From positions 324,595-388,594 of the IMG/VR virus record IMGVR_UViG_3300024262_006558: a stretch of 64,000 bases of DNA; one strand, 5' to 3'. Shown here piece after piece: positions 17,209 through 58,494 of the stretch (the stretch's first letter is position 1; every line of letters begins with the position of its first letter). The notes beneath the pieces were generated by a model. The model worked only from the letters and a program-made list of their open reading frames with translations, did no database searches and was not told where the DNA came from. Position numbers and translations under genes: made by a program.

Positions 17209-17470
17209 ATCTATCTTTTAAAACTTTTTTCTCACCATACCGATCTGTAAACACAATCAAGTCTGCTCTATTCATTCTATTCCTAGAGTCTACAGCCACA
17301 CCGCTTGTAAAGAACGACATACCTGTAGACCTATGGAAGTTAAAGTCATATAAATTAATATCATTTATATGCTTATATCTAGACCCTTTCACCAAATCAT
17401 TCTCAGTTAAATATATTGGTTCCCTATATGGTCTCCACTGTTTGACTGTGTGGTAAAAACGCTTTCTCAT
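17189..17470 (-). CDS. MRKxFY-leader protein; C-terminus resembles SF4 helicase/RecA-fold C-terminal strands
   Basis: MRKRFY; RADLIVF...KVLKDRFGD. Confidence 0.55.
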   Translation of the reverse strand: MRKRFYHTVKQWRPYREPIYLTENDLVKGSRYKHINDINLYDFNFHRSTGMSFFTSGVAVDSRNRMNRADLIVFTDRYGEKKVLKDRFGDYGQ

Positions 17471-25663: not shown

Positions 25664-26614
25664 TTATTTTTTGAAAAATGTGTCAGCATGAACAAATCCC
25701 ATCCCAAGTCTTGTAGCTGTCGTTTTATCACTGGTCTGGTCTCCTACGAAAATACTGTTTTCAATGTCTATCTCATCACGCATCACATATTTCATAACCA
25801 TACCCATTTGTGGCTTTCTACAATAACAAGAAGGTGGAACATTATGTGGACAATAAGATATTTCGATGTCAATACCAAGTTGTCTATTAGTTTCTTCAAA
25901 ACATTCTATAATGTCTTCTTCAGGTATATTATTTCTATCGATCCCACTTTGGTTGGAAATACCATAAACTTTATATCCCTTGGTAATGAAGTCTTTGATT
26001 ATTTCTGTTCTATTTTCAAGAACAACAACTTCATCTGTTTTGATTGGGAACTTATAAGGTGAACCATCAGGGACATCTCTTACTGTACCATCATAGTCCA
26101 GAAATAAAGCTTTTTGAGTAAATCTTTGATTGTATCTTCTGACAAACTTTCTTTTTTCGATGTTAGAAAACCCTTCTTTCAATTCGGGTTTTTCAAATTG
26201 TTTTTTCATTTTAAAAAGAACAACAATTGGAAACATGTTAGGATCTTTTGATGCTTCTTTATGGTCAGCAATGTCTTTTGCCACCATAAATAATTCACCA
26301 TATCTATCCCACATCCGAGTTAATGCATTGATTTGACAATCTTCTGTTGTGGTAGTCTGCCAAACACATTCGATCTCTACATTGTTTTTGATAGCTAACT
26401 CAATAAATGGTTCTCTAGAAACCTTAGTAGTAAAAGTAGCATCTAAAATAACAGAATTATCATCGTCTATGTGTTTTTGTAGTTCTGGTAATAGGTCAGC
26501 TATAAGACCGCCTGAAACATCCCTACTTAATATATCTAATGATTCGTATTTTGCTTCTTTACAAATACTAGATTTCCCACTTGCGGGGAAACCGCATAAC
26601 ATAGTTATTTTCAT
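25664..26614 (-). CDS. Polynucleotide 5'-kinase / HAD 3'-phosphatase (PNKP-like)
   Basis: GFPASGKS, LSRD, ILDAT; DYDGT, SNQ, CYCRKP, FVGD. Confidence 0.85.
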   Translation of the reverse strand: MKITMLCGFPASGKSSICKEAKYESLDILSRDVSGGLIADLLPELQKHIDDDNSVILDATFTTKVSREPFIELAIKNNVEIECVWQTTTTEDCQINALTRMWDRYGELFMVAKDIADHKEASKDPNMFPIVVLFKMKKQFEKPELKEGFSNIEKRKFVRRYNQRFTQKALFLDYDGTVRDVPDGSPYKFPIKTDEVVVLENRTEIIKDFITKGYKVYGISNQSGIDRNNIPEEDIIECFEETNRQLGIDIEISYCPHNVPPSCYCRKPQMGMVMKYVMRDEIDIENSIFVGDQTSDKTTATRLGMGFVHADTFFKK

Positions 26615-28228: not shown

Positions 28229-28429
28229 TTATATTACTAAAGTTTTCTTAATTTCTTCATGAGTTGAAATTACCTCTTCCTTGGAAGGGCGTCTATTTCC
28301 TTTTTCACATAAAATCCTTCTTACCATTGAAGCTTCGATGGATATTAACTTATCCATCAAGTCTTCATTAGTATTGTCTTGCAATAATGCAACATATATT
28401 TTTTCCCACTTTTGTCTTAGTTTTTTCAT
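28229..28429 (-). CDS. Hypothetical protein
   Basis: 66 aa; start overlaps ligase stop. Confidence 0.5.
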   Translation of the reverse strand: MKKLRQKWEKIYVALLQDNTNEDLMDKLISIEASMVRRILCEKGNRRPSKEEVISTHEEIKKTLVI

Positions 28430-36173: not shown

Positions 36174-37868
36174 CTATTTTTTATTTAAAAGATAAACATC
36201 ATCTTCCCACGCTATGATTCCAGCGTTAGTTACATACAAAGATGTGGAATCTGAAGTAAAACTGCAAGAGATTGAAGCTATTTCTTGAAAATCTGATGTT
36301 CTAATAACTTTAATACCTCCATCATTCGGTTCAAATATCATACCCGCAGCCTTTCCTCCGAACTCATACATTCTCTTAACTTCATTTGGAGAAAATACAA
36401 CCTTCATCCCATCTATTTTGAAATACTTGTATTTCAACTCTGGGCCTTCTATATATTGAGCTATTCCTAAATTAGCTTTTTGGAAAACTAATTTTACATT
36501 ATCCTGAAACGCTACATTATTCATAGCTTTGCCTGAATTATATAACAACCTCTTTTTGCCTCCAAGATTTTGCATATACGCTCCACGATTGATAAATCCT
36601 TTTGAGAAAACATCTTGAACTTCTACTCTCAATCTATCATTAGATGGCTGAAAAATCTCATCAAGATACACGTTGGTCATTTTATCATCCCCAATCATAA
36701 CCAACATATTTTCATATTGATTAAATGAAGGTTCATCATCAAAAGTGAAGTTTTTTATCTTAGTTCTTTCTTTTTCCGATTTGATATAATATAAACTATT
36801 CCCTCTCTTTCCATAAATAAATTTATCTGTAAGGAAGATGAATTCATATTCATCTCTAGAAAGAGCAAATTTCTGTCTTACATGCCCTTTGTTGGAGCTG
36901 TCATAAATGATGTAATTTTCATCGGTAGCTATATAGCCTTGATTCTCCATAAAAAAGACATTGTTCACCTCTAGTGAACTAGTAATGCAGCTCACGTTTA
37001 CATCTTTGTCAGAGAACTGTGCAGGCTTTATTTTTTTAACTTTCTTAGTAGCAGCTACTGGAGTTCCAGCTAATGACATGAGAAATCTGTCACCTTCACA
37101 GTATAACAAATCATATTGATTGGTTAAAGATACATCCGTTATAGGCTCATACGCTTTGGGTATTTTTATATCGGGATCTTTTTTAAATACGGGGAGCTTC
37201 AACTTCATACGATCCTCAATTTTCTTATGCACTTTATGCACTCCTTTAAATGGGTGTATGTGCGTAAGCATGTTGAATATGAGGACAGACAACGCGAAGA
37301 AGTCGCTAGTTTCAGCAACTGTTCCTCCATGTAAATAATCTCTTATGTCTTGCAGTAAAATTCCAGAGTGAGGATGGTTTGGAGTCTGATAAGAATCCAC
37401 ATCAATCAGTCTTAAATCACCTTTGTTATTGATCATAACATTGAACTGGTTTAGATCTCCTATAACCACTTCATTCTTATGAGCGTATTCAACGGATTTA
37501 ATTAATGCTTCACCAATCTTTCTCTTTATCTTGTCAGTGATATTGTTTCTTCCGCAAAAGTTCTTGGCAAATATACTAGACAAAGGAAAGAATCCTTGCC
37601 CTAAATACTCCATGGTAAACCCAACGATCTGGTCGTTCTGATTCATTAACAGCTCTCTAGGGGACACGAATAGAGTCTGATCTAAACCACTAAGGTAATC
37701 AAACTGATCTTCCGTTATAGGGGTTATATTGTCATGATATATTTTCGCAACAATACTTGAATCGCTCTTGATAGATATGATTCTACCTTCCCCTCCTCTA
37801 TGTATCTCATCTACCTCGTCAATCGCATATCGATTCCCTAAAGGTGTCTTTAACTGAAGTAATGCCAT
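36174..37868 (-). CDS. Ser/Thr protein kinase of TerY-P-like triad
   Basis: GGEGRI, AKIYH, IGDLNQFNV, IDVDSYQ, SDFFALSVL, HPFKG. Confidence 0.8.
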   Translation of the reverse strand: MALLQLKTPLGNRYAIDEVDEIHRGGEGRIISIKSDSSIVAKIYHDNITPITEDQFDYLSGLDQTLFVSPRELLMNQNDQIVGFTMEYLGQGFFPLSSIFAKNFCGRNNITDKIKRKIGEALIKSVEYAHKNEVVIGDLNQFNVMINNKGDLRLIDVDSYQTPNHPHSGILLQDIRDYLHGGTVAETSDFFALSVLIFNMLTHIHPFKGVHKVHKKIEDRMKLKLPVFKKDPDIKIPKAYEPITDVSLTNQYDLLYCEGDRFLMSLAGTPVAATKKVKKIKPAQFSDKDVNVSCITSSLEVNNVFFMENQGYIATDENYIIYDSSNKGHVRQKFALSRDEYEFIFLTDKFIYGKRGNSLYYIKSEKERTKIKNFTFDDEPSFNQYENMLVMIGDDKMTNVYLDEIFQPSNDRLRVEVQDVFSKGFINRGAYMQNLGGKKRLLYNSGKAMNNVAFQDNVKLVFQKANLGIAQYIEGPELKYKYFKIDGMKVVFSPNEVKRMYEFGGKAAGMIFEPNDGGIKVIRTSDFQEIASISCSFTSDSTSLYVTNAGIIAWEDDVYLLNKK

Positions 37869-49021: not shown

Positions 49022-49023
49022 TG

Positions 49024-49107
49024 TACTCGAAGAGGGAGTCGAACCCTCATGCCCATAAGGGCGCTAGATCCTAAGTCTAGTGCGTCTACCAATTCCGCCA
49101 TCCGAGC
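49024..49107 (-). tRNA. tRNA-Leu(TAG), canonical type II
   Basis: CTAGA-CT TAG GA-TCTAG, long V arm, A73. Confidence 0.92.
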
Positions 49108-49213
49108 AAGTAAATAAATTTAAACTTTTTTTATGATATTATCAAATTATGCTAATACAAAAAAGCGAAGACTCACGCCCTCGCTTTTAAACTACTATTA
49201 TTTCAAAATGTGA

Positions 49214-49618
49214 TTATTTCTTCTTCAGCATTCTATAAATAGGTTCGAAACCTATTCCAAACGCTAATCTCAATATAACAAAGTCAATAACTAGATTATC
49301 TGTAATAGGTTGAAATAACACCATTCCAGCAAAGAAACATAAAAACATTGCAGCTTGAGCAAAATGCCACCCATCCGTTAATGAGACAAACACTGTCGCG
49401 CTTAATGGAAAACGTTCTTTATATTCTGGAGTAAATTTCCATAAATAATACCATCGCTTTTTATATTCTTTAACTCTTCTTCCCCCTGAGTTGATCTTCC
49501 ACTTTTTCTTCCAACTTTTGGATTTATTCCAGTAGTTGTTTAAGAAACCGTCTTCGGAGCTAACGTCCATTATGGCGTTTGCAGCTCCAGCAAATAATGC
49601 AAATAAAATTGACAACAT
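49214..49618 (-). CDS. Membrane protein
   Basis: Hydrophobic segments; TDGWH motif. Confidence 0.6.
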   Translation of the reverse strand: MLSILFALFAGAANAIMDVSSEDGFLNNYWNKSKSWKKKWKINSGGRRVKEYKKRWYYLWKFTPEYKERFPLSATVFVSLTDGWHFAQAAMFLCFFAGMVLFQPITDNLVIDFVILRLAFGIGFEPIYRMLKKK

Positions 49619-49626
49619 GTTTTTAT

Positions 49627-49812
49627 TTATAAATATGTTGTGTTTTTTGTGCCTCCAGAATTATAATATGTACTTCCAGAATTATAATATGTACTTCCAG
49701 AATTAGGTATATAAGGATCTATACACTCTCTTTCACAACTAAACAATGTCGGGATAAAAATTGTCCCCAATGTTACAATTGATGCTTTTTTTAAAAAATC
49801 TCTCCTATTCAT
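49627..49812 (-). CDS. Small Tat-signal lipoprotein
   Basis: MNRRDFLKK...LFSC; NSGSTYY repeats. Confidence 0.65.
   Translation of the reverse strand: MNRRDFLKKASIVTLGTIFIPTLFSCERECIDPYIPNSGSTYYNSGSTYYNSGGTKNTTYL
49654..49704. repeat. 21-nt tandem repeat inside Tat lipoprotein gene
   Basis: ccagaattataatatgtactt x2 plus partial copy. Confidence 0.8.
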
Positions 49813-49837
49813 AGTATATAAATATACTTATTTTTTG

Positions 49838-49917
49838 TACCCCTGGAGAGACTCGAACTCTCAAAAGCTCTGGGTTTGAACCAGTTATCTGTACCGATTT
49901 GAATAAGCCACAGGGGC
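49838..49917 (-). tRNA. Atypical tRNA with CAA (Leu) anticodon, short V arm, enlarged D region
   Basis: GCCCCTG/CAGGGGT acceptor, CTGG-TT CAA AC-CCAG, GAGAG-TTCGAGT-CTCTC. Confidence 0.75.
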
Positions 49918-49922
49918 GGGAT

Positions 49923-50165
49923 TTAAATTCTTCTTATTAGTTTTTTAAACTTAACACTTATTACTTTGATAGGGTTTATTTTATATGCATGAAAATACAA
50001 CCCAAAAAAGCAAGCTGATAACAGGTAAAAAAAGAAGGTTGTACTCCAGTAAGAATCTGTTAACTTCATCAGCATTGCGAATGCTATATCGTATCCTAGA
50101 GGGTTGAAGAATGTCCCCATTACTAATGCTAGTGTTCCGATCGTTTTTCTGTTCACCTTCATCAT
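49923..50165 (-). CDS. Small membrane protein
   Basis: FFNPLGYD...two TMs. Confidence 0.6.
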   Translation of the reverse strand: MMKVNRKTIGTLALVMGTFFNPLGYDIAFAMLMKLTDSYWSTTFFFYLLSACFFGLYFHAYKINPIKVISVKFKKLIRRI

Positions 50166-50202
50166 CCATTGTTTTCATATTTCGTTTAACATTTATTTAG
50201 TG

Positions 50203-50282
50203 TACCCCTGGAGAGACTCGAACTCTCAAAAGATCTGGGTCTAAGCCAGTTAGCTGTACCGATTTGCATAATCCACAGGGGC
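50203..50282 (-). tRNA. Atypical tRNA with TAG (Leu) anticodon, short V arm
   Basis: Paralog of 49838..49917; loop CT TAG AC. Confidence 0.75.
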
Positions 50283-50350
50283 ATATAATTATAAATAGTC
50301 GTGACTTGTATCCACGGATGTAACCTCTCAACTTTGCGTTCTATTCATTG

Positions 50351-50433
50351 TACCTCAGACAGGATTTGAACCTGCACGCCCATTACGGGCACTGGATTTT
50401 AAGTCCAGCGTGTCTGCGTTCCACCACCGAGGC
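50351..50433 (-). tRNA. tRNA-Leu(TAA), type II
   Basis: CTGGA-CT TAA AA-TCCAG, long V arm, A73. Confidence 0.9.
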
Positions 50434-50446
50434 GTGATGTTTGTTG

Positions 50447-50526
50447 TACCCCTGGCGAGACTCGAACTCGCAATAGCTCTGGGTTTAAGCCAGTTATCTG
50501 TACCGATTTGAATAAGCCACAGGGGC
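50447..50526 (-). tRNA. Atypical tRNA with TAA (Leu) anticodon, short V arm
   Basis: Paralog; loop CT TAA AC; T stem GCGAG/CTCGC covaries. Confidence 0.75.
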
Positions 50527-50531
50527 ATGCT

Positions 50532-50744
50532 TTATTTTTTTACTACCTTTTCAAAAAAGCTAACGGGCATGTCTCCGTTAATTTTCATAAACTCTTCTTC
50601 CGTTAAGCAATCACCATTAGCTTGCCAAGCCGCTTGGCAGAAATCTCTATATTCCCTACCATACTTTCTAGTGATATCCTTAAAGCTGATCTTAAAGTTG
50701 GATTCATCCGACTCAAAGTCAATAATTTCAAATATTCTTTTCAT
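50532..50744 (-). CDS. Hypothetical protein (start MKRIFE; longer ORF call overlaps tRNA)
   Basis: ATG 3 nt after tRNA-Leu(AAG) discriminator. Confidence 0.55.
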   Translation of the reverse strand: MKRIFEIIDFESDESNFKISFKDITRKYGREYRDFCQAAWQANGDCLTEEEFMKINGDMPVSFFEKVVKK

Positions 50745-50746
50745 AG

Positions 50747-50834
50747 TACCTCTACCCAGACTCGAACTGGGAACGTTTCTCATGTTTGCCACGGGTTCTT
50801 AGCCCGCCAGCTTTGCCAATTTGCTCATAGAGGT
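50747..50834 (-). tRNA. tRNA-Leu(AAG), A34
   Basis: GCGGG-CT AAG AA-CCCGT, long V arm, A73. Confidence 0.85.
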
Positions 50835-50843
50835 ATGAATAAA

Positions 50844-50962
50844 TGTTTCAAACAGGACTCGAACCTATATTGTTACGTACCAATCAAGTCAGAGTCAGAG
50901 CCTCCTTCAATATGAGGAAACTAACTTCCAACCTGTGCGCCTACCAATTTCGCCATTGAAAC
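50844..50962 (-). ncRNA. Type II tRNA-like RNA with ~34-nt insertion in anticodon loop
   Basis: GTTTCAA/TTGAAAC acceptor, Leu-like D arm, CAGGT/ACTTG stem enclosing 41 nt, V arm, T arm. Confidence 0.7.
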
Positions 50963-50967
50963 ATTTG

Positions 50968-51040
50968 AGCCTATGACAGGAATCGAACCTGCGACATCTT
51001 CCACACCAAGGAAGTGCTCTACCGACTGAGCTACATAGGC
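50968..51040 (-). tRNA. tRNA-Thr(GGT), G37
   Basis: CTTCC-TT GGT GT-GGAAG. Confidence 0.9.
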
Positions 51041-51045
51041 ATTAG

Positions 51046-51181
51046 TGGAACAGCGGGGAATCGAACCCCTTGCAAGATTTACATTTGACACCTTAAGATA
51101 TCAACAATACTCACTAGGATTTATCACCACTTAACCAAGAGCGATCTTAAGCTCACTAGAGGCTGCAGATAAAACTGCTCC
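51046..51181 (-). ncRNA. 136-nt tRNA-like RNA resembling a tmRNA tRNA-like domain (acceptor plus T arm, no D stem)
   Basis: GGAGCAG/CTGTTCC-A, GGGG-TTCGATT-CCCC, TGCAG/TTGCA closing stem. Confidence 0.65.
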
Positions 51182-51187
51182 GTTTAG

Positions 51188-51259
51188 AGCTACATGCAGG
51201 AATCGAACCCGCCTCTGAAGCTTACAAGGCTCCTGCATCACCGACAATGCTTATGTAGC
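51188..51259 (-). tRNA. tRNA-Thr(TGT)
   Basis: GGAGC-CT TGT AA-GCTTC. Confidence 0.9.
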
Positions 51260-51272
51260 AAGAATAATTTTG

Positions 51273-51403
51273 GGGAGGGGGCTGGACTCGAACCAGCGAC
51301 CTTCTGCTTAACAGGCAATTAGAAGGAAGACAAAACATAGCCTTATTTTTAAGGGGATCATTAAATCTTTTAAGATGCTCTAACCAACTGAGCTACCCCT
51401 CCC
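51273..51403 (-). tRNA. tRNA-Asn(GTT) interrupted by 56-nt insertion in 5' strand of anticodon stem
   Basis: TC[56 nt]TGC-CT GTT AA-GCAGA; intact D, T and acceptor arms; G-1 and C73. Confidence 0.78.
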
Positions 51404-51417
51404 ATTTATTATACTTG

Positions 51418-51505
51418 AGGTACTAGTAAGATTCGAACTTACGATGGAGGATCTCTCCTCGACAGATTTGCAGCCTGCCCCTTTCGCCCACTCAGGCATA
51501 GTACC
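51418..51505 (-). tRNA. tRNA-Cys(GCA) with long variable arm
   Basis: GCAGG-CT GCA AA-TCTGT; V arm GAGGA-GAGA-TCCTC; U73. Confidence 0.85.
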
Positions 51506-51516
51506 ATATATTTTTG

Positions 51517-51590
51517 TGGAGGCACTCGGTAACGATCCGAGATCTCTGGGACTTCAATCCAGCGCATAGACCAATCTTTGCTATGCCTCC
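51517..51590 (-). tRNA. tRNA-Phe(GAA) copy 1, G37
   Basis: CTGGA-TT GAA GT-CCCAG; T loop ATCGTTA. Confidence 0.85.
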
Positions 51591-51604
51591 CTATTATTTT
51601 ATTG

Positions 51605-51789
51605 TGGAGGAAGACGGAATCGAACCGCCGACCAACCCCTCCTACGGGGCCACTCTACCAAGACACCTTTTCAAAACCACCATACAACTTAAACACTTTC
51701 CAAAACCATTATTCATGACTAATGGCTAATTACTTATGTCGTTCTCTAGCTGAATCTACTCCGTTGAAATGTCACTGAGTTACTCCTCC
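51605..51789 (-). ncRNA. tRNA-like RNA with ~113-nt insertion in D loop and irregular anticodon loop (GTAGGA)
   Basis: GGAGGAG/TTCCTCC acceptor, ACTC/GAGT D stem, insert closed by GACATTT/AGGTGTC, intact T arm. Confidence 0.7.
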
Positions 51790-51846
51790 ATGGGTCCCGT
51801 TATTTTCTAGACAGCAAGCACGGGACCACACCGCTGTAAGACGTTG

Positions 51847-51921
51847 TGCTGTGTACTGGATTCGAACCAGTGATCTTCTCGGCTTCAACGAAACGCTTTA
51901 GACCAACTAAGCTAACACAGC
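51847..51921 (-). tRNA. tRNA-Phe(GAA) copy 2, G37
   Basis: TTTCG-TT GAA GC-CGAGA. Confidence 0.9.
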
Positions 51922-51928
51922 ATTTTTG

Positions 51929-52002
51929 GGTGATGGACGGGCTACGACCCCGCGACCTTTGGCGCCACAAGCCAATGCTCTACCAACTGAGCTACCACCA
52001 CC
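51929..52002 (-). tRNA. tRNA-His(GTG) copy 1, encoded G-1
   Basis: TTGGC-TT GTG GC-GCCAA; G-1:C73. Confidence 0.88.
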
Positions 52003-52071
52003 ATATTCATAAACTGAGGAATTCCTAAGTTTACGATTTGTAATACCAATACGTCAAAGAACTATTCTTTG

Positions 52072-52144
52072 GGTGTCGATGGGGTTCGAACCCTACCATC
52101 CAGATTCACAGTCTGGGACTCTCTCCAAGTGAGCTACCGACACC
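52072..52144 (-). tRNA. tRNA-His(GTG) copy 2, encoded G-1
   Basis: CCAGA-CT GTG AA-TCTGG; G-1:C73; irregular T stem. Confidence 0.85.
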
Positions 52145-52188
52145 ATATAAATTTGACAACCGTTTGTTATCAAAAAGGGTTATAAAAC

Positions 52189-52220
52189 AAAAAACCCCAA
52201 CTCTTTCGAGATGGGGTTTT
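52189..52220 (-). terminator. Attenuator terminator upstream of tRNA operon
   Basis: AAAACCCCATCTC-GAAA-GAGTTGGGGTTTTTT. Confidence 0.85.
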
Positions 52221-52248
52221 GAATGCTTTAAGTTTTATCTAAATCAAC

Positions 52249-52350
52249 TCAATTTGTTGATTTTTTAAACACGGACATACCCATCTCGGCTGACGTACTA
52301 AACGTTGTCAGACAATGTAATGATGTAGTATGTAAATTCGTGTTTTTCAT
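52249..52350 (-). promoter_or_regulatory. Leader peptide ORF (33 aa, 7 Thr) containing antiterminator CGAGATGGG
   Basis: MKNTNLHTTSLHCLTTFSTSAEMGMSVFKKSTN*; 9-nt perfect complement to terminator 5' arm CCCATCTCG. Confidence 0.75.
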
Positions 52351-52448: not shown

Positions 52449-53340
52449 TTTTAAATTTCCTTTCAAAATAATGGTATAAACACTTTATGTTCAAGTATAT
52501 AATATGAACATCATGTTGTGATTTCCTTTCAAAATAATGGTATACATACTGCGTCTAATATATTTAGGCATGCCTCAAATGTTGTGATTTCCTTTCAAAA
52601 TAATGGTATACATACTTTTCTACTCTTTATACTGAAGAAGCAAAGGGTTGTGATTTCCTTTCAAAATAATGGTATACATACTTTAAGCTTTTACAGGCCT
52701 CATCTTACGACTGTTGTGATTTCCTTTCAAAATAATGGTATACATACTATGGGTACATAGTTCCTCTCTCATACTTCGGTTGTGATTTCCTTTCAAAATA
52801 ATGGTATACATACTGCGTCTAATATATTTAGGCATGCCTCAAATGTTGTGATTTCCTTTCAAAATAATGGTATACATACTTTCGACATGAATACATCGCC
52901 TTTCAAAGTGGTTGTGATTTCCTTTCAAAATAATGGTATACATGCTGATTGAGCTTATGGGTGTTATGGATTCTTCGTTGTGATTTCCTTTCAAAATAAT
53001 GGTATAAATACTCTATCTTTGGAACAATAAACGATAAGGGGTTGTGATTTCCTTTCAAAATAATGGTATACATACTATTTGGCATCGAATTCCTGTTTGA
53101 GTGATAGTTGTGATTTCCTTTCAAAATAATGGTATACATACTATTTAAATACTTGCACATTAATATATACCCGTTGTGATTTCCTTTCAAAATAATGGTA
53201 TACATACTAAAGCCTGTTGACTATATGAGGCAACTAGTGTTGTGATTTCCTTTCAAAATAATGGTATACATACTTAAAAACAAAAAATGGCTTTTGCGAT
53301 ACTCGTTGTGATTTCCTTTCAAAATAATGGTATACATACT
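52449..53340 (-). CRISPR. CRISPR array: 13 repeats of 36 nt (52515..53340) plus a degenerate distal repeat; 30-nt spacers
   Basis: Plus-strand repeat GTTGTGATTTCCTTTCAAAATAATGGTATACATACT, period 66 (one 28-nt spacer); degenerate copy at 52449..52484 implies leader at right and minus-strand transcription. Confidence 0.97.
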
Positions 53341-53454
53341 AGGCCCTATCATAATCGATTAATAGATAGGTGATTATAAAGTATATTGAGTTAAAAAACT
53401 GGAGACTTATTATATAGTAACATATATTTACGATCAGTTTTCTCATTATAATTT
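53341..53454 (-). promoter_or_regulatory. CRISPR leader
   Basis: AT-rich 114 nt between cas6 stop and first repeat; cctatc...gatagg hairpin. Confidence 0.6.
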
Positions 53455-54183
53455 CTATTTAGCCAGGTATTGTCTATTATTTTCAATGTTGAATATTGAT
53501 CCAAACCCTATACCAGTAGAGCTTCCAATTCCAATAGCATATAAGGTATCCATAACTTTTTTATTTGCAAAAATTTCTAAATTACATTGATTTGCTATGT
53601 TAAATACTCTTTTTCCATTTATTGATTGTTTAATATCAATATGTCGAGTTCTATTTCTTTTTGATTTCCTTACTTTTACTTTAAATTTATCTAATTTCAA
53701 ATCGGAATTAACTTTACTCAACTTGTTTATAATATGCTTATGGAGCTCCTCTTCAAAATCATCATCATTTAAAGTATGTATAATGTCAGATTTATTCTTT
53801 GTGGTCTTTAAAAAAATTGGAGATAACATACCTACATGATTCCATCCATTTTTGAAATTATCTATTCTAAAATCATATCCATCATATTTCATACCATAAC
53901 ACAATTCAATCGTATTTGCATTGATAATAAGAAAATTAATTATGGCAGATATGAATTCTGCATCCAGAGATGAAACAGTAATATAGCATCCGCTACTCAT
54001 ATCTAAGAAATTCTCACCTTTAATCTTTTTTCCGCCCTGGATTGTAGATAAAGAATAGTTTGAGGATCTATCATGATAATGATTATTTTTTCCTAAACAT
54101 TTATGTAAGAAAGATATTACATGATATTGATTATTAAAAGGAACTCCCTCTTTGGTGCCTTTAAATTTAATTTTTATACGCAT
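53455..54183 (-). CDS. cas6: CRISPR-associated endoribonuclease Cas6
   Basis: C-terminal GIGSSTGIGFG loop; YSLSTIQGG; LSPI. Confidence 0.9.
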   Translation of the reverse strand: MRIKIKFKGTKEGVPFNNQYHVISFLHKCLGKNNHYHDRSSNYSLSTIQGGKKIKGENFLDMSSGCYITVSSLDAEFISAIINFLIINANTIELCYGMKYDGYDFRIDNFKNGWNHVGMLSPIFLKTTKNKSDIIHTLNDDDFEEELHKHIINKLSKVNSDLKLDKFKVKVRKSKRNRTRHIDIKQSINGKRVFNIANQCNLEIFANKKVMDTLYAIGIGSSTGIGFGSIFNIENNRQYLAK

Positions 54184-55157
54184 AAAATTTCTGTTTTTAA
54201 ATCACTATTAATGTCTCCAACTCTTTTAAAATCATCAAAATTTAGATCTCTATCTTTATAGATACCCTTTATTTTTACGAAACCACCGTCTAAAATCGTA
54301 GCACACCCTTTACTGTTTCTAACTCTTTCAATATCTTCTTCAGAAAAAGGAATGTATAATATACCATTATATATCTCAGTATAGCCAATGCTCTTAGGAA
54401 CATTTAACCTAGTATCTTTTTTCTTGTTTGAATTAGTTATTAACTCTTTTGCTTTTGTATCGCTTACTTTTGCAATATAATTATAGAACTGTGTTAAGCC
54501 TCTTTCTTTTGCTAATGTAAAGAAATTTTTATATTCATTTTCTATATCTCCAGTAACTCCATTTACAAATATTTTTTGTAATTTTAATAAGAGTTCTATA
54601 CATGTATACTGTTTCTTAATATTCTCTATTGTATCCACATTTAAAACCACCTTAGATAACTCCATCAAGGAATAAAAAACATCATATGTACCTAGTATAT
54701 CTTTACAATATCTCCTTATAGTTTCATAATTTATATTATTATATTTAGAAGTTGAATTCCAATGAGCCTTTCTAAGTGAAGTAACCTCAGTCCTCACATG
54801 TCTATTGCCACTCTTATCAATATTTACATTAGAAATATCTAATTTTAGATACGAATCTTCTGCAACGCTCATCAAATCTTCACGATTTTTATAATGAACC
54901 TCCCTTAGAGAAGGCTTTGGTCTATCACCGACCAAAACCTGTAGAAGATTATTTATTTGCTTTTTAGTAATAGGTTCTTCAAAATATTTAGTGATAACTT
55001 TTTTGGGTATATTATTTTCCTTGTCAGCTGCTTGAACAACTGTTCTTGATCTAAATTTACCATTTTCAATAACTAAATCTTTTTCATTTTTGTTACCATA
55101 TTTATTAACTCTAAATAATTTAGCGTTCTTGAACTCTACTACCAAATAGTTTTTCAT
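54174..55157 (-). CDS. cas5fv: Cas5fv-like Cascade subunit
   Basis: INNLLQVLVGDRPK, TEVTSLRK and C-terminal GCATILDGG align with recalled Cas5fv blocks; position between cas7fv and cas6. Confidence 0.65.
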   Translation of the reverse strand: MKNYLVVEFKNAKLFRVNKYGNKNEKDLVIENGKFRSRTVVQAADKENNIPKKVITKYFEEPITKKQINNLLQVLVGDRPKPSLREVHYKNREDLMSVAEDSYLKLDISNVNIDKSGNRHVRTEVTSLRKAHWNSTSKYNNINYETIRRYCKDILGTYDVFYSLMELSKVVLNVDTIENIKKQYTCIELLLKLQKIFVNGVTGDIENEYKNFFTLAKERGLTQFYNYIAKVSDTKAKELITNSNKKKDTRLNVPKSIGYTEIYNGILYIPFSEEDIERVRNSKGCATILDGGFVKIKGIYKDRDLNFDDFKRVGDINSDLKTEILCV

Positions 55158-56230
55158 TTCTTTTTTGATTTAGTTTTTTTAGATTCTGATTTATCCTCTT
55201 TTTCAGCATAAACTTTCATCGCTTCACGTAATTCTTTTGATATTTTTTCATCTGCCTCAGAGTAAAATATTTCAAAATCGCACTCAAAATCTTCAATATC
55301 TTTTCTTTTTTCTAAAGAAACCCAACCGTTTTCTTTATCAAAAACATCATCAATTGGATCATATACCAATTTATATTCCAATTTAGATGTTTTTGCAAAT
55401 GCATGAGTTCTTTTTACTTGGGCCTCCATCATCATTTCCAATATTCTTCTTACTAAGAAGTTAATATCATCGTTTGATAATAAACATCCATACTCAGGAG
55501 TTTTATCTGAACCTGAGTTAAGCGTAAAGTAATTTATGTCAGAATTAAATGATGGTAATTTACTTTTTAAAAAATATTTGAATTTTTCAAAGTCATCGGG
55601 ATTAATCATCTGTCTATCATACAATAAATCAAATGATAAGAATTGCATAGATTGTATATCAATATCACCCTCACTCATATAAGTGATCTCTCCAACTTCT
55701 TCTTTTTTGTGCAAGGTTATACCAGATTTGTCTTTATCACCTGTTTCTTTTTCTGATCTTCTTGAGTGAAAACCTAAGACACTTTTGGCGTCATTAGTTT
55801 GTTCAGCATATGATAAATTAAGGCAACTCTTCTTTTTCTCACCCGCTCCACCGCTAATAGTTGTCATAAATCCTCTAACTAACATTTCAGGCGTAGCATA
55901 GTACATTAATTTCAAATCTTTGTTTGAATTTATACTTGAATTATAACCTTCATCAGGAAAAATGGCGCTCTTTAAGCATTGGGAGGAAATAGCAATTTTA
56001 TAATTAGCCGCCTTTACTTCTTCACCTTTGTCATTTATAACAATGTTTTCATAGATATTTTTTTTGGCATATGAAACGTTATCATTTAAATCAATTAAAT
56101 GATTTAAACCATCAACTGGTTTACCTTTATTCCAAAAAGCTAACGTTTGTTTTTTATCATCGTAATTAACAATTCCTCGACCTTCTAATTTCCATCTAAG
56201 TAGAATGTTTTTAACTTTTCTTTTCATCAT
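55154..56230 (-). CDS. cas7fv: Cas7fv-like Cascade backbone subunit
   Basis: LEGRGIVNYD, ISSQCLKSAIF, LVRGF, TYMSEGDIDIQSMQFLSFDLLYDR, EYGCLLSNDD align with recalled Shewanella Cas7fv. Confidence 0.8.
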   Translation of the reverse strand: MMKRKVKNILLRWKLEGRGIVNYDDKKQTLAFWNKGKPVDGLNHLIDLNDNVSYAKKNIYENIVINDKGEEVKAANYKIAISSQCLKSAIFPDEGYNSSINSNKDLKLMYYATPEMLVRGFMTTISGGAGEKKKSCLNLSYAEQTNDAKSVLGFHSRRSEKETGDKDKSGITLHKKEEVGEITYMSEGDIDIQSMQFLSFDLLYDRQMINPDDFEKFKYFLKSKLPSFNSDINYFTLNSGSDKTPEYGCLLSNDDINFLVRRILEMMMEAQVKRTHAFAKTSKLEYKLVYDPIDDVFDKENGWVSLEKRKDIEDFECDFEIFYSEADEKISKELREAMKVYAEKEDKSESKKTKSKKK

Positions 56231-56271
56231 TTTTTATATTTAAGAGTAGTAAGTTTATATTTTTTTCCCAA

Positions 56272-58494
56272 TTAAACAAATGTTTCTAACATTTTCTTAT
56301 CAATTAACCCATAAGTTTCGCTATAAACATTATTATAAGTGATGTATGGAGTGTTGCTAAACACTGCACATCTCCTGAAAGAATCTATTGTCATCTTATC
56401 GTTTTTGTATTTATTCCCATAATCAAACCTATCATCGCCTTTTAAAGATTTAATAGTCTTCTTTATGTTTGACAATGTTTTACTGGTCTCTTTAAAATGC
56501 TGATCAAATCCATATGTAACACTTTTAGTGAAAGGGTCTGACCAAGTACCACACTCTCTCTTGCATATATAAAATACTTGCGCATTTGAACATCTCAACT
56601 TATTAGATCCAGATTTAATAATATCACTTTCAGATTTAGAAGACTTTGTATACACAAAGCTAATTTTTTTCAAATTAGCTAAAGACTCTCTGTGTACATT
56701 ACTTAAATACTTACTGAAAGCATTTACTTCTTTCACGGAATACTCATTATATAACTCATAGAATTCATCTAGAGTTATATACTTTATGTCTTTTGATTCA
56801 AGAAATGTATACCAACTATCCATTAACTCTGTATTGTATAATTTGGAAACAGTTTCCTTCTCTATATGATTGTGCGATTTAAAGATGTTTATAGTACACT
56901 CCTCTGATATATCACCCCAGCGATTGACTCTACCAATTCTTTGAGCTGTAGCTAAATGAGACATAACAGATTCATATAAATGATTGAAGCTTATATCGAT
57001 AGAAGCTTGTATTATTAACGTAGAGCATAAAGAATTCTTTACTATATTTCTTGAGCTTTTTTTATTGTATGTTTTATAGATAGAATCAAACATCTCTTCT
57101 TTTTTCTTATTTTCAAATTTGCTATGAAATAAGTCTAATTTATTATTCTCAAATTTAAATCTTTGAGAATTTGAAACATTATTAAAAACATATAAAGAGT
57201 TATCTTTAACTTCTACATTACCATAATCTATTAAGCTTACTTTATACTCTTTAGAGTGAGCTGAGGGATAGTGCGTATTTTCAGATGGTAATATTTTAGT
57301 ACATTTTAATGTTGGATCTATTATAGAGTGTATATTTATTGGAGTAGCACTAAGAAGCATAGTCTTGCTATTGGTAAACATTGTTCTCATCTTAAGCATA
57401 TTTGTGAACAAGGAAAAGTAAGCTTCTCTAGTTATGAACTCATGGTATTCATCGAAAACAACATCACATTTTGCAATATAATAAAGCCTTGATAAAATAG
57501 GGTTTTTTAGGTTTGGAGATAGAAAATTATCTATATTGGTAATTATAATATCTGAATTAAACTCTTCTGTATCATTGTGATTTTTCTTTTTGGTTTCTGA
57601 TGTTAAAAATAACTCAACTTTTAAATTGCAATTTATATTTTCCAACTCAGACAAAATGCTATAATAAACAGATTCAGCAACAGTGTTTCTAGGGCATACC
57701 CAAATGAGTTTTTTGTCAGAAGATTTTATATTCCACAATAAACCAGTTAAAGTTTTTCCAAATCCTGCAGCTGCATTAACTATTAAATTTTTTGATTTAT
57801 CTTCTGATATTTTTATTTGATTGTCTAACCTTTCATTCTTATCGAAAGTATCTAGATTATATAAGGGATTTTCTCTATATATATTTGATTGAGAGCTTGT
57901 GTCGATCATTCTATCTGCAGATACTAGAATAGTTCTGAAGAACATTTTTTTGATATCTTCATTTATATCATCTCTAAGCACGTTTTCACCGTAATATTTT
58001 GGCAACACATAATCAACAGTTACTTCTTTTAGATAATCTTTACTTAATACCGTTGTTAAATACTTCTTCATAATATTTTTATCACTAATAGATATGGTAT
58101 CTAAAATAGATTCAGAAGTAGGTAAAGTTTTAGGATAATTTTTTATTCCATGATGATATAAAACACAATCAGTCACAAAATGTTTATAGCTAGAATCAAA
58201 TTTTAAATATTTCTCCAAAAAAGCCCATCCAATTTCATTATGTAAAAAAACATCTTTCCTAGTTTCATTTTTGCTTTTTAAATTTTCCTGAAATGCTGTT
58301 GTGCATTTACCTATATCATGCAATAAAGCTGATACTTTTACAATATCGATAAAAACTTTTTTCTCATCTGCATCAAAATAGTAATCACTTTCTTCTAAAT
58401 ACATTTCTTCTAATATATACAAAGCTCTCTCTGCAACATATGAAGAGTGTTCTATTAATGTGACACCATTGCTTTTTGCTAAAATTTTTTTCAT
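56272..58494 (-). CDS. cas3: Cas3 HD nuclease-helicase (stand-alone, no Cas2 fusion)
   Basis: LLHDIGK, HN..G, YHHG, SADR; AAAGFGKT, DEYH, SATP, QASIDIS, QRIGRVNRWG. Confidence 0.93.
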   Translation of the reverse strand: MKKILAKSNGVTLIEHSSYVAERALYILEEMYLEESDYYFDADEKKVFIDIVKVSALLHDIGKCTTAFQENLKSKNETRKDVFLHNEIGWAFLEKYLKFDSSYKHFVTDCVLYHHGIKNYPKTLPTSESILDTISISDKNIMKKYLTTVLSKDYLKEVTVDYVLPKYYGENVLRDDINEDIKKMFFRTILVSADRMIDTSSQSNIYRENPLYNLDTFDKNERLDNQIKISEDKSKNLIVNAAAGFGKTLTGLLWNIKSSDKKLIWVCPRNTVAESVYYSILSELENINCNLKVELFLTSETKKKNHNDTEEFNSDIIITNIDNFLSPNLKNPILSRLYYIAKCDVVFDEYHEFITREAYFSLFTNMLKMRTMFTNSKTMLLSATPINIHSIIDPTLKCTKILPSENTHYPSAHSKEYKVSLIDYGNVEVKDNSLYVFNNVSNSQRFKFENNKLDLFHSKFENKKKEEMFDSIYKTYNKKSSRNIVKNSLCSTLIIQASIDISFNHLYESVMSHLATAQRIGRVNRWGDISEECTINIFKSHNHIEKETVSKLYNTELMDSWYTFLESKDIKYITLDEFYELYNEYSVKEVNAFSKYLSNVHRESLANLKKISFVYTKSSKSESDIIKSGSNKLRCSNAQVFYICKRECGTWSDPFTKSVTYGFDQHFKETSKTLSNIKKTIKSLKGDDRFDYGNKYKNDKMTIDSFRRCAVFSNTPYITYNNVYSETYGLIDKKMLETFV

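What the first reader, a model, noticed from the sequence alone, without database searches (positions are those of the whole stretch)
53455..58494. Minimal phage type I-F2(Fv)-like CRISPR-Cas with non-F Cas6, stand-alone Cas3, and no Cas8/Cas1/Cas2 at the locus
Seen: order cas3-cas7-cas5-cas6-leader-array, with no large subunit or adaptation genes adjacent. Cas7 and Cas5 align blockwise with recalled Shewanella Cas7fv/Cas5fv. Known: I-F2 has Cas2-Cas3 fusion and Cas6f with hairpin repeats. Here Cas3 begins directly with its HD domain, Cas6 has the standard G-rich loop and the repeat lacks a strong hairpin. Inference: a compact, nuclease-competent chimeric type I variant for phage-phage competition or host targeting.
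Basis: partly seen in the sequence, partly recalled or inferred. Interest (0 to 1): 0.8.

Follow-up and report, generated by a model that had tools for sequence, protein, structure and literature searches.

The report
Cas8-less type I CRISPR in huge phage
A giant bacteriophage carries a four-gene, DNA-shredding CRISPR system that is a stripped-down relative of the smallest known type I system (I-F2), with a different RNA-processing enzyme and no genes for acquiring new spacers. The same cassette recurs in dozens of other giant phages, so it is a real, widespread but unclassified variant.

Summary
On the minus strand lie cas3 (740 aa, HD domain first), a Cas7fv-like gene, a Cas5 gene, a Cas6 gene, a 114-nt leader and a 14-repeat array (36-nt repeats, 30-nt spacers).

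Cas7, Cas3 and Cas5 each find the Shewanella I-F2 complex as their best or only solved relative:
- Cas7: profile E 4.5e-29; Foldseek E 1e-17.
- Cas3: E 4.7e-36, with the Cas2 part missing.
- Cas5: detectable by fold only, Z 7.2.

Cas6 is a generic Cas6b-like (TIGR01877) enzyme, not Cas6f. No Cas8, Cas11, Cas1, Cas2 or Cas4 was found in the 64-kb window.

The cassette is conserved in about 27 distinct huge-phage contigs and 3 MAG contigs. Its Cas7 family spans hundreds of 50%-identity clusters, mostly viral. Sister clades keep the Cas3-Cas7-Cas5 core but carry other Cas6 and repeat types. One of them also has Cas1 and Cas2.

Two 99%-identical phages differ in leader-proximal spacers, so arrays turn over without a local cas1. 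The 36/30 format matches Bacteroidota II-C and VI-B arrays, which suggests adaptation in trans.

No protospacer was found, so the targets are unknown. Verdict: a new variant of a known kind (I-F2-derived), not a canonical I-F2 member.

The parts
56272..58494 (-). cas3: stand-alone HD nuclease plus SF2 helicase plus C-terminal domain, 740 aa, with no Cas2 domain
   Evidence: Pfam HD/Cas3_HD at residues 11-119, DEAD at 233-388 and Cas3-like_C_2 at 448-525. PADLOC's best model is Cas3fv, 4.6e-47, over the helicase and C-terminal part. The only PDB hit is the I-F2 Cas2-3 chain 9g44_A, E 4.7e-36, aligning residues 223-591 to 312-694. H16, H59, D60, H85, H114, H115, D194, GxGK 244-247 and DExH 348-351 are invariant in 27 homologues.
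55154..56230 (-). cas7 (Cas7fv-like backbone subunit), 358 aa, with a Lys-rich C-terminal helix
   Evidence: NCBIfam Cas7fv E 1.2e-16, below the equivalog cutoff. Pfam PF28157 'Cas7fv-like'. The family profile hits only Cas7fv in the PDB, E 4.5e-29. The AF2 model has pLDDT 86; the top six Foldseek hits are all Cas7fv, E 1e-17 to 3e-14, and the next best are at 3e-7 or worse.
54174..55157 (-). cas5: RRM core with an inserted alpha-helical domain (about residues 144-243), 327 aa
   Evidence: No HMM or PDB sequence hit. It is conserved at this position in 25 distinct loci. The AF2 model has pLDDT 76. The best fold match is Cas5fv 9g44_B (Foldseek E 2.9e-3, prob 0.93; VIA Z 7.2), followed by Cas5e, Cas5-HNH, I-B and I-A Cas5.
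53455..54183 (-). cas6: generic Cas6 (Cas6b-like) pre-crRNA endoribonuclease, 242 aa
   Evidence: TIGR01877 at 82 bits against a cutoff of 58.65. PADLOC Cas6b 1.4e-33. Pfam Cas_Cas6_C. There is no Cas6f match. H37 and the G-rich loop G218-G228 are invariant in 19 homologues.
53341..53454 (-). leader (AT-rich, 114 nt) between cas6 and the first repeat
   Evidence: Read directly from the sequence. The degenerate terminal repeat sits at the far end of the array, which places the leader here. No promoter could be called above chance.
52449..53340 (-). CRISPR array: 14 repeats of 36 nt (AGTATGTATACCATTATTTTGAAAGGAAATCACAAC) and 13 spacers (12 of 30 nt, one of 28 nt), 12 of them unique
   Evidence: One spacer occurs twice, at 52551-52580 and 52815-52844. 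The last repeat (52449-52484) carries 6 changes. Family repeats share a 5-bp stem, a GNAAG loop and a CACAAC tail, with a covarying pair.

Best explanation
This is an interference-only, Cas8-less and Cas11-less type I CRISPR-Cas cassette, derived from the I-F2 (I-Fv) lineage and carried by a huge phage (at least 390-494 kb) from a subsurface metagenome.

Likely mechanism, inferred by homology to the solved Shewanella I-F2 complex:
1. The array is transcribed from the leader next to cas6.
2. The Cas6b-like Cas6 cuts each 36-nt repeat at the 3' base of a small hairpin. This leaves a roughly 8-nt ...AUCACAAC 5' handle.
3. Cas5 caps the handle, and its inserted helical domain reads the PAM in place of Cas8.
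4. About five or six Cas7fv-like subunits line the 30-nt guide and carry the displaced strand in place of Cas11.
5. The stand-alone Cas3 is recruited directly by Cas7 and Cas5, then unwinds and degrades the target DNA.

Shown here: the gene identities, the architecture, conservation of the catalytic motifs, conservation of the cassette across many huge phages, and turnover of spacers between near-identical phages.

Inferred: the assembly, the cleavage site, the PAM reading and DNA degradation.

New spacers are most likely installed in trans by a host adaptation module. The 36-nt repeat and 30-nt spacer format, with GTTGT at the leader-distal repeat end, is that of Bacteroidota II-C and VI-B arrays, where in-trans adaptation has been demonstrated. 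This last step is a hypothesis. The targets, whether rival phages or host DNA, are unknown.
For: - Architecture and family calls.
- I-F2 kinship of three proteins: the Cas7 profile hits only 5o6u_C and 9g44_F, E 4.5e-29. The Cas7 model's top six fold hits are all Cas7fv, ten orders of magnitude better than any other Cas7. The only PDB hit for Cas3 is the I-F2 Cas2-3, E 4.7e-36, with an offset of about 89 residues that corresponds to the absent Cas2. The best fold match for Cas5 is Cas5fv, Z 7.2, and the model has a helical insertion.
- Mechanistic template: in I-F2, the Cas5 AH domain reads the PAM, the Cas7 wrist loops carry the non-target strand, and Cas3 is recruited by Cas7 and Cas5 (PMC12956352).
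- Function retained: HD, Walker A, DExH and motif VI residues are invariant in 27 Cas3 proteins. H37 and the G-rich loop of Cas6 are invariant.
- Conserved cassette: the same four genes plus array occur in about 27 distinct IMG/VR loci on contigs of 80-600 kb and in 3 MAG contigs. Gene order varies in some, and no other flanking gene is conserved.
- Family size: there are 609 clusters at 50% identity, and Atlas clusters are 58-84% viral.
- Spacer turnover without a local cas1: L033 and L034 have flanks 99.2-99.6% identical. Their arrays share 13 units in order, but each has 3 unique leader-proximal spacers plus differing internal blocks. No Cas1 or Cas2 was found in any locus except L047.
- Array format precedent: in F. 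columnare, II-C and VI-B arrays have 36-bp repeats, 30-bp spacers and a leader-distal GTTGT, and VI-B adapts through the II-C Cas1 in trans (PMC8092290).
Against: - No protospacer was found for any of the six window spacers searched, nor locally for the 245 unique spacers from 18 family loci. Neither a PAM nor a target class is therefore known.
- No RNA data exist for this phage, so expression and crRNA ends are unobserved.
- Cas5 has no sequence-level link to Cas5fv, and the fold match is modest: Z 7.2 and TM 0.31, with part of the model at low confidence.
- Only 64 kb of a genome of at least 390 kb was inspected, so cas1/cas2 or a Cas8-like gene could lie elsewhere.
- The host is only inferred to be Bacteroidota, from MAG bin labels and ligase relatives.
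- The internal block differences between L033 and L034 may reflect recombination rather than acquisition.
Confidence: 0.75

Rival explanations
1. It is simply a canonical type I-F2 system that annotation pipelines miss, with nothing structurally different from the Shewanella system.
For: The gene order cas3-cas7-cas5-cas6 equals that of I-F2. Cas7 and Cas3 find I-F2 proteins as their only solved relatives.
Against: Several defining I-F2 features were tested and not met:
- There is no Cas2-Cas3 fusion. The family Cas3 proteins are 737-828 aa and start with HD.
- Cas6 is TIGR01877/Cas6b-like, not Cas6f.
- Repeats are 36 nt and spacers 30 nt, against 27-28 and 32 in I-F2.
- There is no cas1.
- Cas7 scores 60.9 bits against the Cas7fv equivalog cutoff of 200.
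- Scaling the PDB E-value for Shewanella Cas7fv to this library puts it near 5e-25. By that estimate, at least 378 clusters at 50% identity lie closer to this family's profile than Shewanella Cas7fv does.
Confidence: 0.08
2. It is a type I-B-derived system, or a I-B/I-F hybrid whose effector is really I-B-like, that has lost Cas8b.
For: Cas6 is best matched by Cas6b models, and full-length Cas3 matches Cas3b models at 1e-39 to 1e-35. Long, weakly structured repeats are common in I-B (own knowledge).
Against: The Cas7 profile and Cas7 fold hit Cas7fv specifically; the I-B Cas7 chain 8fcj scores only E 2e-6 with TM about 0.4. The Cas3 helicase hits only the I-F2 Cas3 in the PDB, and the top PADLOC model is Cas3fv. 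The best fold match for Cas5 is Cas5fv. Only the Cas6/repeat module is non-F, and that module is exchanged between clades.
Confidence: 0.04
3. The cassette is not used for DNA destruction. It could act as a binding-only regulator or silencer, it could hijack host crRNAs through its Cas6, or it could be a decaying remnant.
For: Many phage and plasmid CRISPR systems lack adaptation genes or nucleases and act by repression (PMC7162821; PMC11656645). No targets were found. The repeat format resembles host array types, which would permit cross-processing.
Against: The HD nuclease and helicase motifs are invariant in 27 diverged Cas3 proteins that share 25-41% identity. All four genes are intact and co-conserved in every complete locus. 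Arrays are long, up to 37 repeats, and differ between near-identical phages. This argues for active, selected interference rather than decay.
Confidence: 0.08
4. Adaptation is not supplied by the host. The phage encodes cas1-cas2 (and perhaps cas4) elsewhere in its 390-494 kb genome, making it a complete but split system.
For: One distant family member, L047, does carry a Cas1e-like gene and a small putative cas2 ORF (82 aa, assigned by position and size only) between cas6 and the array. Only 64 kb of this genome was available. Spacer turnover shows that some integrase acts on these arrays.
Against: No Cas1 or Cas2 was found within 10 kb either side in any of the other roughly 29 distinct loci, nor in the 64-kb window. 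Huge-phage CRISPR loci are reported generally to lack Cas1, Cas2 and Cas4 (PMC7162821).
Confidence: 0.15

Closest known systems
Type I-F2 (I-Fv) CRISPR-Cas of Shewanella putrefaciens CN-32 (Cas6f2, Cas5f2, Cas7f2, Cas2-3f2; PDB 5O6U, 5O7H, 9G44)
   Same: It has no Cas8 and no Cas11, and the same gene order cas3-cas7-cas5-cas6. Cas7 is a homologue of Cas7fv: profile E 4.5e-29 and fold E 1e-17. The Cas3 helicase and C-terminal part are homologous to Cas2-3f2, E 4.7e-36. Cas5 has an RRM core with an inserted helical domain, and Cas5fv is its best fold match. It very probably uses the same Cas8-independent mechanism.
   Different: - Cas3 lacks the Cas2 domain (740 aa against 882 aa in 9g44_A).
- Cas6 is a generic Cas6b-like enzyme, not Cas6f.
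- Repeats are 36 nt with a weak 5-bp stem and spacers are 30 nt, instead of 27-28-nt strong-hairpin repeats and 32-nt spacers.
- There is no cas1.
- Cas7 carries an extra Lys-rich C-terminal helix and scores far below the Cas7fv equivalog cutoff.
- Cas5 is not alignable to Cas5fv at sequence level.
- It is carried by huge phages rather than bacterial islands or plasmids.
Adaptation-less CRISPR-Cas loci of huge phages (Al-Shayeb et al. 2020, PMC7162821), including their I-C variant with a substitute helicase
   Same: It is carried by a huge phage, lacks Cas1, Cas2 and Cas4, has a compact effector, and its presumed role is superinfection exclusion or host manipulation.
   Different: The published example readable here is a I-C derivative that lacks Cas6 and Cas3. 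This system keeps a bona fide Cas3 and a Cas6, and it derives from I-F2. I could not read the 2022 Cell survey of virus-encoded CRISPR-Cas, which may list this family.
Vibrio phage ICP1 type I-F1 system (PMC10161043)
   Same: It is a phage-encoded type I-F-lineage system without Cas11 that depends on Cas3 for cleavage.
   Different: ICP1 has Cas8f (Csy1), a Cas2/3 fusion, Cas1, Cas6f and I-F repeats. The present system has none of these.
Bacteroidota type II-C and VI-B CRISPR arrays (Flavobacterium columnare, PMC8092290)
   Same: The array format is the same: 36-bp repeats, about 30-bp spacers, and GTTGT at the leader-distal repeat end. The VI-B locus likewise lacks cas1/cas2 and is filled in trans.
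   Different: The effectors are unrelated (Cas9 and Cas13b against Cascade plus Cas3). Sequence-level similarity of the repeats to VI-B repeats is recalled from memory only and could not be verified with the tools.

Membership tests
Type I-F2 (I-Fv) | Cas7f2 (Cas7fv) backbone subunit | tested here: inconclusive
   It is clearly homologous. Cas7fv is the only PDB relative (E 4.5e-29) and the fold match is specific. However, it scores 60.9 bits against the NCBIfam equivalog cutoff of 200. It is a divergent sister family with its own Pfam entry, PF28157 'Cas7fv-like'.
Type I-F2 (I-Fv) | Cas5f2 with an alpha-helical (AH) domain that replaces Cas8 in PAM reading | tested here: inconclusive
   There is no sequence match. 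The AF2 model shows an RRM core with a helical insertion at about residues 144-243, and Cas5fv is its best fold match (Z 7.2, 17% identity over 135 residues). PAM reading was not testable.
Type I-F2 (I-Fv) | Absence of Cas8 (large) and Cas11 (small) subunits | tested here: met
   Only four cas genes are present, with overlapping or near-abutting ORFs. No Cas8 model hit in the window. No additional gene is conserved with the cassette across loci.
Type I-F2 (I-Fv) | Cas2-Cas3 fusion (Cas2-3f2) | tested here: not met
   Cas3 is 740 aa and HD starts at residue 11. Alignment to 9g44_A is offset by about 89 residues. All 27 family Cas3 proteins are 737-828 aa.
Type I-F2 (I-Fv) | Cas6f endoribonuclease | tested here: not met
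   The best models are Cas6b and TIGR01877, with no Cas6f hit. The only PDB relative is the Pyrococcus Cas6 PH0350, and that match is weak.
Type I-F2 (I-Fv) | 27-28-nt repeats with a stable hairpin, and 32-nt spacers | tested here: not met
   Repeats are 36 nt with MFE 0 and a weak conserved 5-bp stem. Spacers are 30 nt. The I-F2 values come from PMC12956352.
Type I-F2 (I-Fv) | Adjacent cas1 (adaptation module) | tested here: not met
   No Cas1 was found in the 64-kb window or within 10 kb either side in related loci, except L047.
Type I (general) | Cas3 with intact HD nuclease and SF2 helicase motifs | tested here: met
   Pfam, NCBIfam and PADLOC all call Cas3. The HD, Walker A, DExH and motif VI residues are invariant.
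Type I-B | Cas8b plus a I-B-type Cas7 (DevR/Cst2) and Cas5 | tested here: not met
   There is no Cas8b. Cas7 and Cas5 relate to I-F2, not I-B. Only Cas6, and in part the HD region of Cas3, resemble I-B models.
Functional CRISPR array | Regular repeats, unique spacers, a degenerate terminal repeat, and a leader next to the cas operon | tested here: met
   There are 14 repeats; 11 of the first 13 are identical and two differ by one base. Twelve spacers are unique. The last repeat is degenerate. No evidence of transcription was available.

The most novel reading that the evidence does not exclude
Huge phages of Bacteroidota-like hosts carry an unclassified I-F2-derived subtype whose processing module (Cas6 plus repeat) has been swapped to match the host's own array format of 36-nt repeats and 30-nt spacers with GTTGT ends, as in II-C and VI-B. 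On this reading the phage parasitises the host's Cas1-Cas2 to load new spacers into the phage array. It may also process or load host crRNAs. The result would be a virus-owned, Cas8-free DNA-shredding effector fed by the host's adaptive memory.
Probability: 0.25. Interest if true: 0.8.

Novelty: new variant of a known kind. Interest (0 to 1): 0.62.

Why it matters
I-F2 is regarded as the most compact type I system and is being developed for large-deletion genome editing. This phage lineage is leaner still:
- It is about 5 kb: Cas3 of 740 aa without Cas2, plus Cas7, Cas5 and Cas6.
- It is far more diverse than canonical I-F2, with hundreds of 50%-identity Cas7 clusters, mostly viral. That offers a natural library of Cas8-independent PAM readers and Cas3 recruiters.

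The family shows that the Cas3-Cas7-Cas5 interference core tolerates at least three different Cas6/repeat modules. That bears on how class 1 modules recombine and on how subtypes should be defined.

The spacer turnover seen without a local cas1 makes in-trans adaptation of a phage array directly testable. Whether phages use host adaptation machinery has been an open question since the first huge-phage surveys.

NCBI currently names these proteins 'hypothetical', so the systems are invisible to standard annotation.

Tried and rejected
1. Spacer targets. The array was compared by BLAST with GenBank phages and gave only chance-level hits with E above 0.9. All window spacers were compared with the window and the fetched loci and matched only themselves. 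Five spacers with N at every 6th position were scanned against IMG/VR and one against JGI metagenomes. These found only the array itself, or the same phage in a 494-kb assembly. The 245 unique spacers from 18 family loci, compared with all loci fetched by then, gave only 20-22/30 partial matches, which I rejected as chance.
2. Rfam. No CRISPR-DR family match was found; only tRNAs matched.
3. Promoter scan. Counts equalled the shuffled expectation, so the result is uninformative.
4. RNA evidence. Only one DNA run, from a subsurface metagenome, holds the locus.
5. Cas1 elsewhere. A search for relatives of the L047 Cas1 in IMG/VR returned only L047 itself.
6. The first genome contigs attempt with the 35-sequence alignment failed for lack of a conserved stretch. 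It worked with 10 sequences.
7. Literature. The 2022 Cell survey of virus-encoded CRISPR-Cas is not held. Reviews that cite it give no detail on type I. The 2025 classification mentions only an I-F1/I-F2 intermediate. My recollection that Cas13b (VI-B) repeats end in ...GGGTAATCACAAC could not be verified and is offered only as a lead.
8. The ESM Atlas search for Cas5 gave only sub-threshold, unrelated hits.
9. A 14-mer of the repeat tail scanned in IMG/VR gave mostly single chance hits. The multi-copy hits were the already known contigs plus one new array, L059, whose cas side lies outside the fetched locus.

Full report
**What is there**

Four ORFs run head to tail on the minus strand:
- 56272-58494, 740 aa
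- 55154-56230, 358 aa
- 54174-55157, 327 aa
- 53455-54183, 242 aa

A 114-nt AT-rich leader follows, and then a CRISPR array at 52449-53340. Parsing the array gives 14 repeats of 36 nt (AGTATGTATACCATTATTTTGAAAGGAAATCACAAC on the coding strand) and 13 spacers, twelve of 30 nt and one of 28 nt. One spacer is present twice. The repeat farthest from cas6 carries six changes, which puts the leader next to cas6.

**Identity of the proteins**

- **Cas3.** The 740-aa protein has HD/Cas3_HD at residues 11-119, a DEAD/ResIII helicase and the Cas3 C-terminal domain. There is no Cas2 domain. PADLOC's best model is Cas3fv, 4.6e-47, over the helicase and C-terminal part; Cas3b models match along the full length. 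Against all PDB sequences its only hit is the Cas2-3 of the Shewanella I-F2 complex (9g44_A, E 4.7e-36). Residues 223-591 align to 312-694, an offset of about 89 residues that matches a missing N-terminal Cas2.
- **Cas7.** The 358-aa protein hits NCBIfam Cas7fv at E 1.2e-16, but at 60.9 bits against a cutoff of 200. It carries the newer Pfam family PF28157 'Cas7fv-like'. A 35-sequence family profile finds only Cas7fv in the PDB (5o6u_C and 9g44_F, E 4.5e-29). An AF2 model (pLDDT 86) has Cas7fv chains as its six best fold matches, at E 1e-17 to 3e-14 and TM 0.55-0.73. The next best (I-E, I-C, I-A and I-B Cas7) start at 3e-7.
- **Cas5.** The 327-aa protein matches nothing in Pfam, NCBIfam or PADLOC, and its 24-sequence profile matches no PDB sequence. 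Its AF2 model (pLDDT 76) is an RRM-type core with a helical domain inserted at about residues 144-243. Its best structural matches are Cas5fv (9g44_B: Foldseek E 2.9e-3, prob 0.93; VIA-align Z 7.2, 17% identity), then Cas5e, Cas5-HNH, and the I-B and I-A Cas5 proteins. It is therefore a Cas5, most like Cas5fv, but only at fold level.
- **Cas6.** The 242-aa protein is a generic Cas6: TIGR01877 at 82 bits against a cutoff of 58.65, and PADLOC Cas6b at 1.4e-33. There is no Cas6f match.

**What is absent**

I scanned 77 other non-overlapping ORFs of the window against PADLOC. None gave a Cas family among the 25 strongest of 37 matched families. The 12 families not shown all had E above 3.9e-5. A relative (L047) supplied a real Cas1e-like protein and a putative Cas2. 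Jackhmmer searches seeded with these found nothing in the window or in any other fetched locus. No gene flanking the cassette is conserved between loci, so no hidden large or small subunit travels with it. Only 64 kb of a genome of at least 390 kb could be inspected.

**Context**

The window is the end of IMG/VR contig IMGVR_UViG_3300024262_006558, which is 388,594 bp. A second assembly of the same phage, Ga0210003_1000004, is 494,080 bp and breaks inside the array at the duplicated spacer. The source is a subsurface metagenome.

The window has other features of a huge phage:
- a cluster of 10-14 tRNAs;
- aminoacyl-tRNA synthetase domains, Thg1, Tpt1, RNA ligase, polynucleotide kinase/phosphatase, Clp protease and homing endonucleases;
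- an NAD-dependent ligase whose nearest phage relatives lie in 635-642-kb uncultured phages and in Bacteroides and Flavobacterium phages.

**The family**

The Cas7 recovers 43 IMG/VR loci, most of them on contigs of 80-600 kb. It also recovers three MAG contigs, labelled Bacteroidia, Bacteroidetes and Smithella. In every complete locus the same four genes and an array occur together. The order is cas3-cas7-cas5-cas6-array, cas7-cas5-cas6-array-cas3, or cas6-cas7-cas5-array-cas3. Pfam tables for three loci show no Cas1, Cas2 or Cas4 within 10 kb.

An exhaustive profile search finds 609 clusters at 50% identity with E at or below 1e-3, and 378 at or below 1e-30. Shewanella Cas7fv scored 104.8 bits against the same profile. 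Scaled to that library, this is E of about 5e-25. By that estimate most of the family is closer to the phage profile than canonical I-F2 is. ESM Atlas clusters for the family are 58-84% viral. NCBI names its members 'hypothetical protein'.

**Modularity**

More distant clades keep Cas3-Cas7-Cas5 but carry other processing modules:
- L038, L039, L043 and L051 have a 165-175-aa Cas6e-like protein. Arrays were recovered for L039 and L043: 32-34-nt strong-hairpin repeats ending GTTGAAAG.
- L046-L048 have a 184-aa Cas6 resembling type IV-A3. An array was recovered for L047, with 28-nt repeats.
- L047 alone also has a Cas1e-like gene and a small ORF (82 aa) that I take to be cas2 from its position and size only.

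On a Cas7 tree the three Cas6 types need only two changes. That is the minimum possible; the shuffled mean is 6.8, and no shuffle in 200 did as well. 'Chimeric' is therefore apt: an I-F2-type interference core combined with exchangeable Cas6/repeat modules.

**Repeat structure**

The window's repeat has no predicted stable fold. Fourteen distinct family repeats nevertheless align without gaps and share a 5-bp stem (columns 16-20 with 26-30), a GNAAG loop and a CACAAC tail. The stem is paired in 88.6% of cells, against 14-64% when the partner is slid. One pair covaries: CG 9, AU 2, UA 2, UG 1. This is modest evidence for a small Cas6 hairpin, with cleavage expected to leave a handle of about 8 nt ending CACAAC.

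**Is it functional?**

Across 27 Cas3 homologues that share 25-41% identity, the following are invariant:
- the HD residues H16, H59, D60, H85, H114, H115 and D194;
- Walker A (G244, G246, K247);
- DExH (D348, E349, H351);
- motif VI (Q518, R522, R525).

In Cas6, H37 and the G-rich loop are invariant.

Arrays are dynamic. L033 and L034 are 99.2-99.6% identical in their flanks and share 13 array units in order. Each has three unique leader-proximal spacers and unrelated internal blocks. Spacers are therefore gained without a local cas1.

**Mechanism**

By homology with the solved I-F2 complex, the Cas5 helical domain should read the PAM. The Cas7 backbone should hold the guide and the displaced strand. 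Cas3 should be recruited directly by Cas7 and Cas5 (PMC12956352). This is inference; nothing here shows assembly or cleavage.

For adaptation, the 36-nt repeat and 30-nt spacer format, with GTTGT (ACAAC on the transcribed strand) at the leader-distal repeat end, equals that of Flavobacterium columnare II-C and VI-B arrays. There, VI-B is filled in trans by the II-C Cas1 (PMC8092290). I therefore propose host-supplied adaptation, as a hypothesis. I also recall that Cas13b repeats resemble the family's 3' half, but I could not verify this.

**Targets**

None were found. See the list of what was tried.

**Comparison and novelty**

The system works like I-F2 and descends from the same lineage. It fails four defining I-F2 features that were tested: the Cas2-3 fusion, Cas6f, the 28/32 array format, and cas1. 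Its Cas7 falls below the equivalog threshold.

Huge phages are known to carry adaptation-less CRISPR loci (PMC7162821). The Cas7 family has a Pfam entry. The 2025 classification lists I-F1 to I-F4 and mentions only an I-F1/I-F2 intermediate. I found no description of this architecture in the literature I could read, and I could not read the 2022 Cell survey. I rate it a new variant of a known kind, of moderate to high interest.

Noticed in passing
window 49023-52144 (minus strand): A dense tRNA cluster lies immediately downstream of the array. ARAGORN finds 10 tRNAs: Leu x3, Thr x2, Cys, Phe x2 and His x2. Rfam adds three more, two of them unusually long (50844-50962, 119 nt; 51273-51402, 130 nt), which may contain introns or inserts. 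GC rises to 0.44 here against about 0.32 elsewhere.
   Followed up: partly
window 5980-7071, 25664-26614, 28429-30486, 17467-18840; other ORFs in 1-48000 not resolved to coordinates: The window holds an RNA-repair and translation toolkit typical of huge phages: a T4-type RNA ligase, polynucleotide kinase/phosphatase, NAD-dependent DNA ligase and a nucleotidyltransferase. Pfam also hits class I (Glu/Gln) and class II (Phe) tRNA synthetase domains, Thg1, Tpt1/KptA, RlaP, Clp protease, PARG and NADAR somewhere among the window's ORFs.
   Followed up: partly
window 1-48000 (ORFs not resolved): PADLOC hits to defence or counter-defence families: AbiEi (1e-33), NsnA (2e-20), IetA, PD-T4-2_A, PD-T4-6 (probably the 564-aa Ser/Thr-kinase-like ORF at 36174-37868), HEC-05 and a GmrSD N-terminal domain.
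   Followed up: no
window 52551-52580 and 52815-52844; L053 (Ga0210003_1000004): One spacer (ATTTGAGGCATGCCTAAATATATTAGACGC) is present twice, four units apart. The 494-kb assembly of the same phage ends exactly inside this part of the array. The duplication probably broke that assembly, and the true genome may be larger than either contig.
   Followed up: partly
L003:6034-9935 (and the identical L025-L032, L041): Immediately upstream of cas7 lies a tandem run of 14 small overlapping same-strand ORFs of 83-107 aa with no Pfam hit. They look like a paralogous gene array of unknown function next to the CRISPR cassette.
   Followed up: no
L040:12100-12900: In this relative's array most repeats carry a tandem duplication of the 3' motif (...AAGGTAATCACAAC TAAGGTAATCACAAC), giving units of about 52 nt. 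Several repeats are degenerate. This may be a decaying or remodelled array.
   Followed up: no
L033:13489-13586 and L034:13225-13322: Both arrays contain the same 98-nt unit where a spacer should be. It holds a badly degenerate repeat, which marks an old shared array core that predates the divergent leader-proximal spacers.
   Followed up: no
window 52158-52266 (+): A sub-threshold Rfam match to the gammaproteobacterial rimP leader (37.5 bits against a gathering score of 47, E 0.004) lies between the last tRNA-His and the array. It is probably chance. The region holds a short inverted repeat (AAATCAACTCAATTTGTTGATTT).
   Followed up: no
window 55154-56230, residues about 327-358 of Cas7: Cas7 ends in a long predicted helix with a Lys-rich tail (...KEDKSESKKTKSKKK). 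The tail is conserved as a K-rich segment across the family and was not aligned to Cas7fv by the profile. It might help hold the displaced DNA strand in the absence of Cas11.
   Followed up: no
P0201 / L046-L048 clade: The clade with 28-nt repeats occurs on contigs of up to 418 kb that are binned as Bacteroidaceae MAGs (NCBI MBR6892648.1, 'hypothetical protein'). These contigs may be phage DNA binned with host genomes; this was not checked.
   Followed up: no
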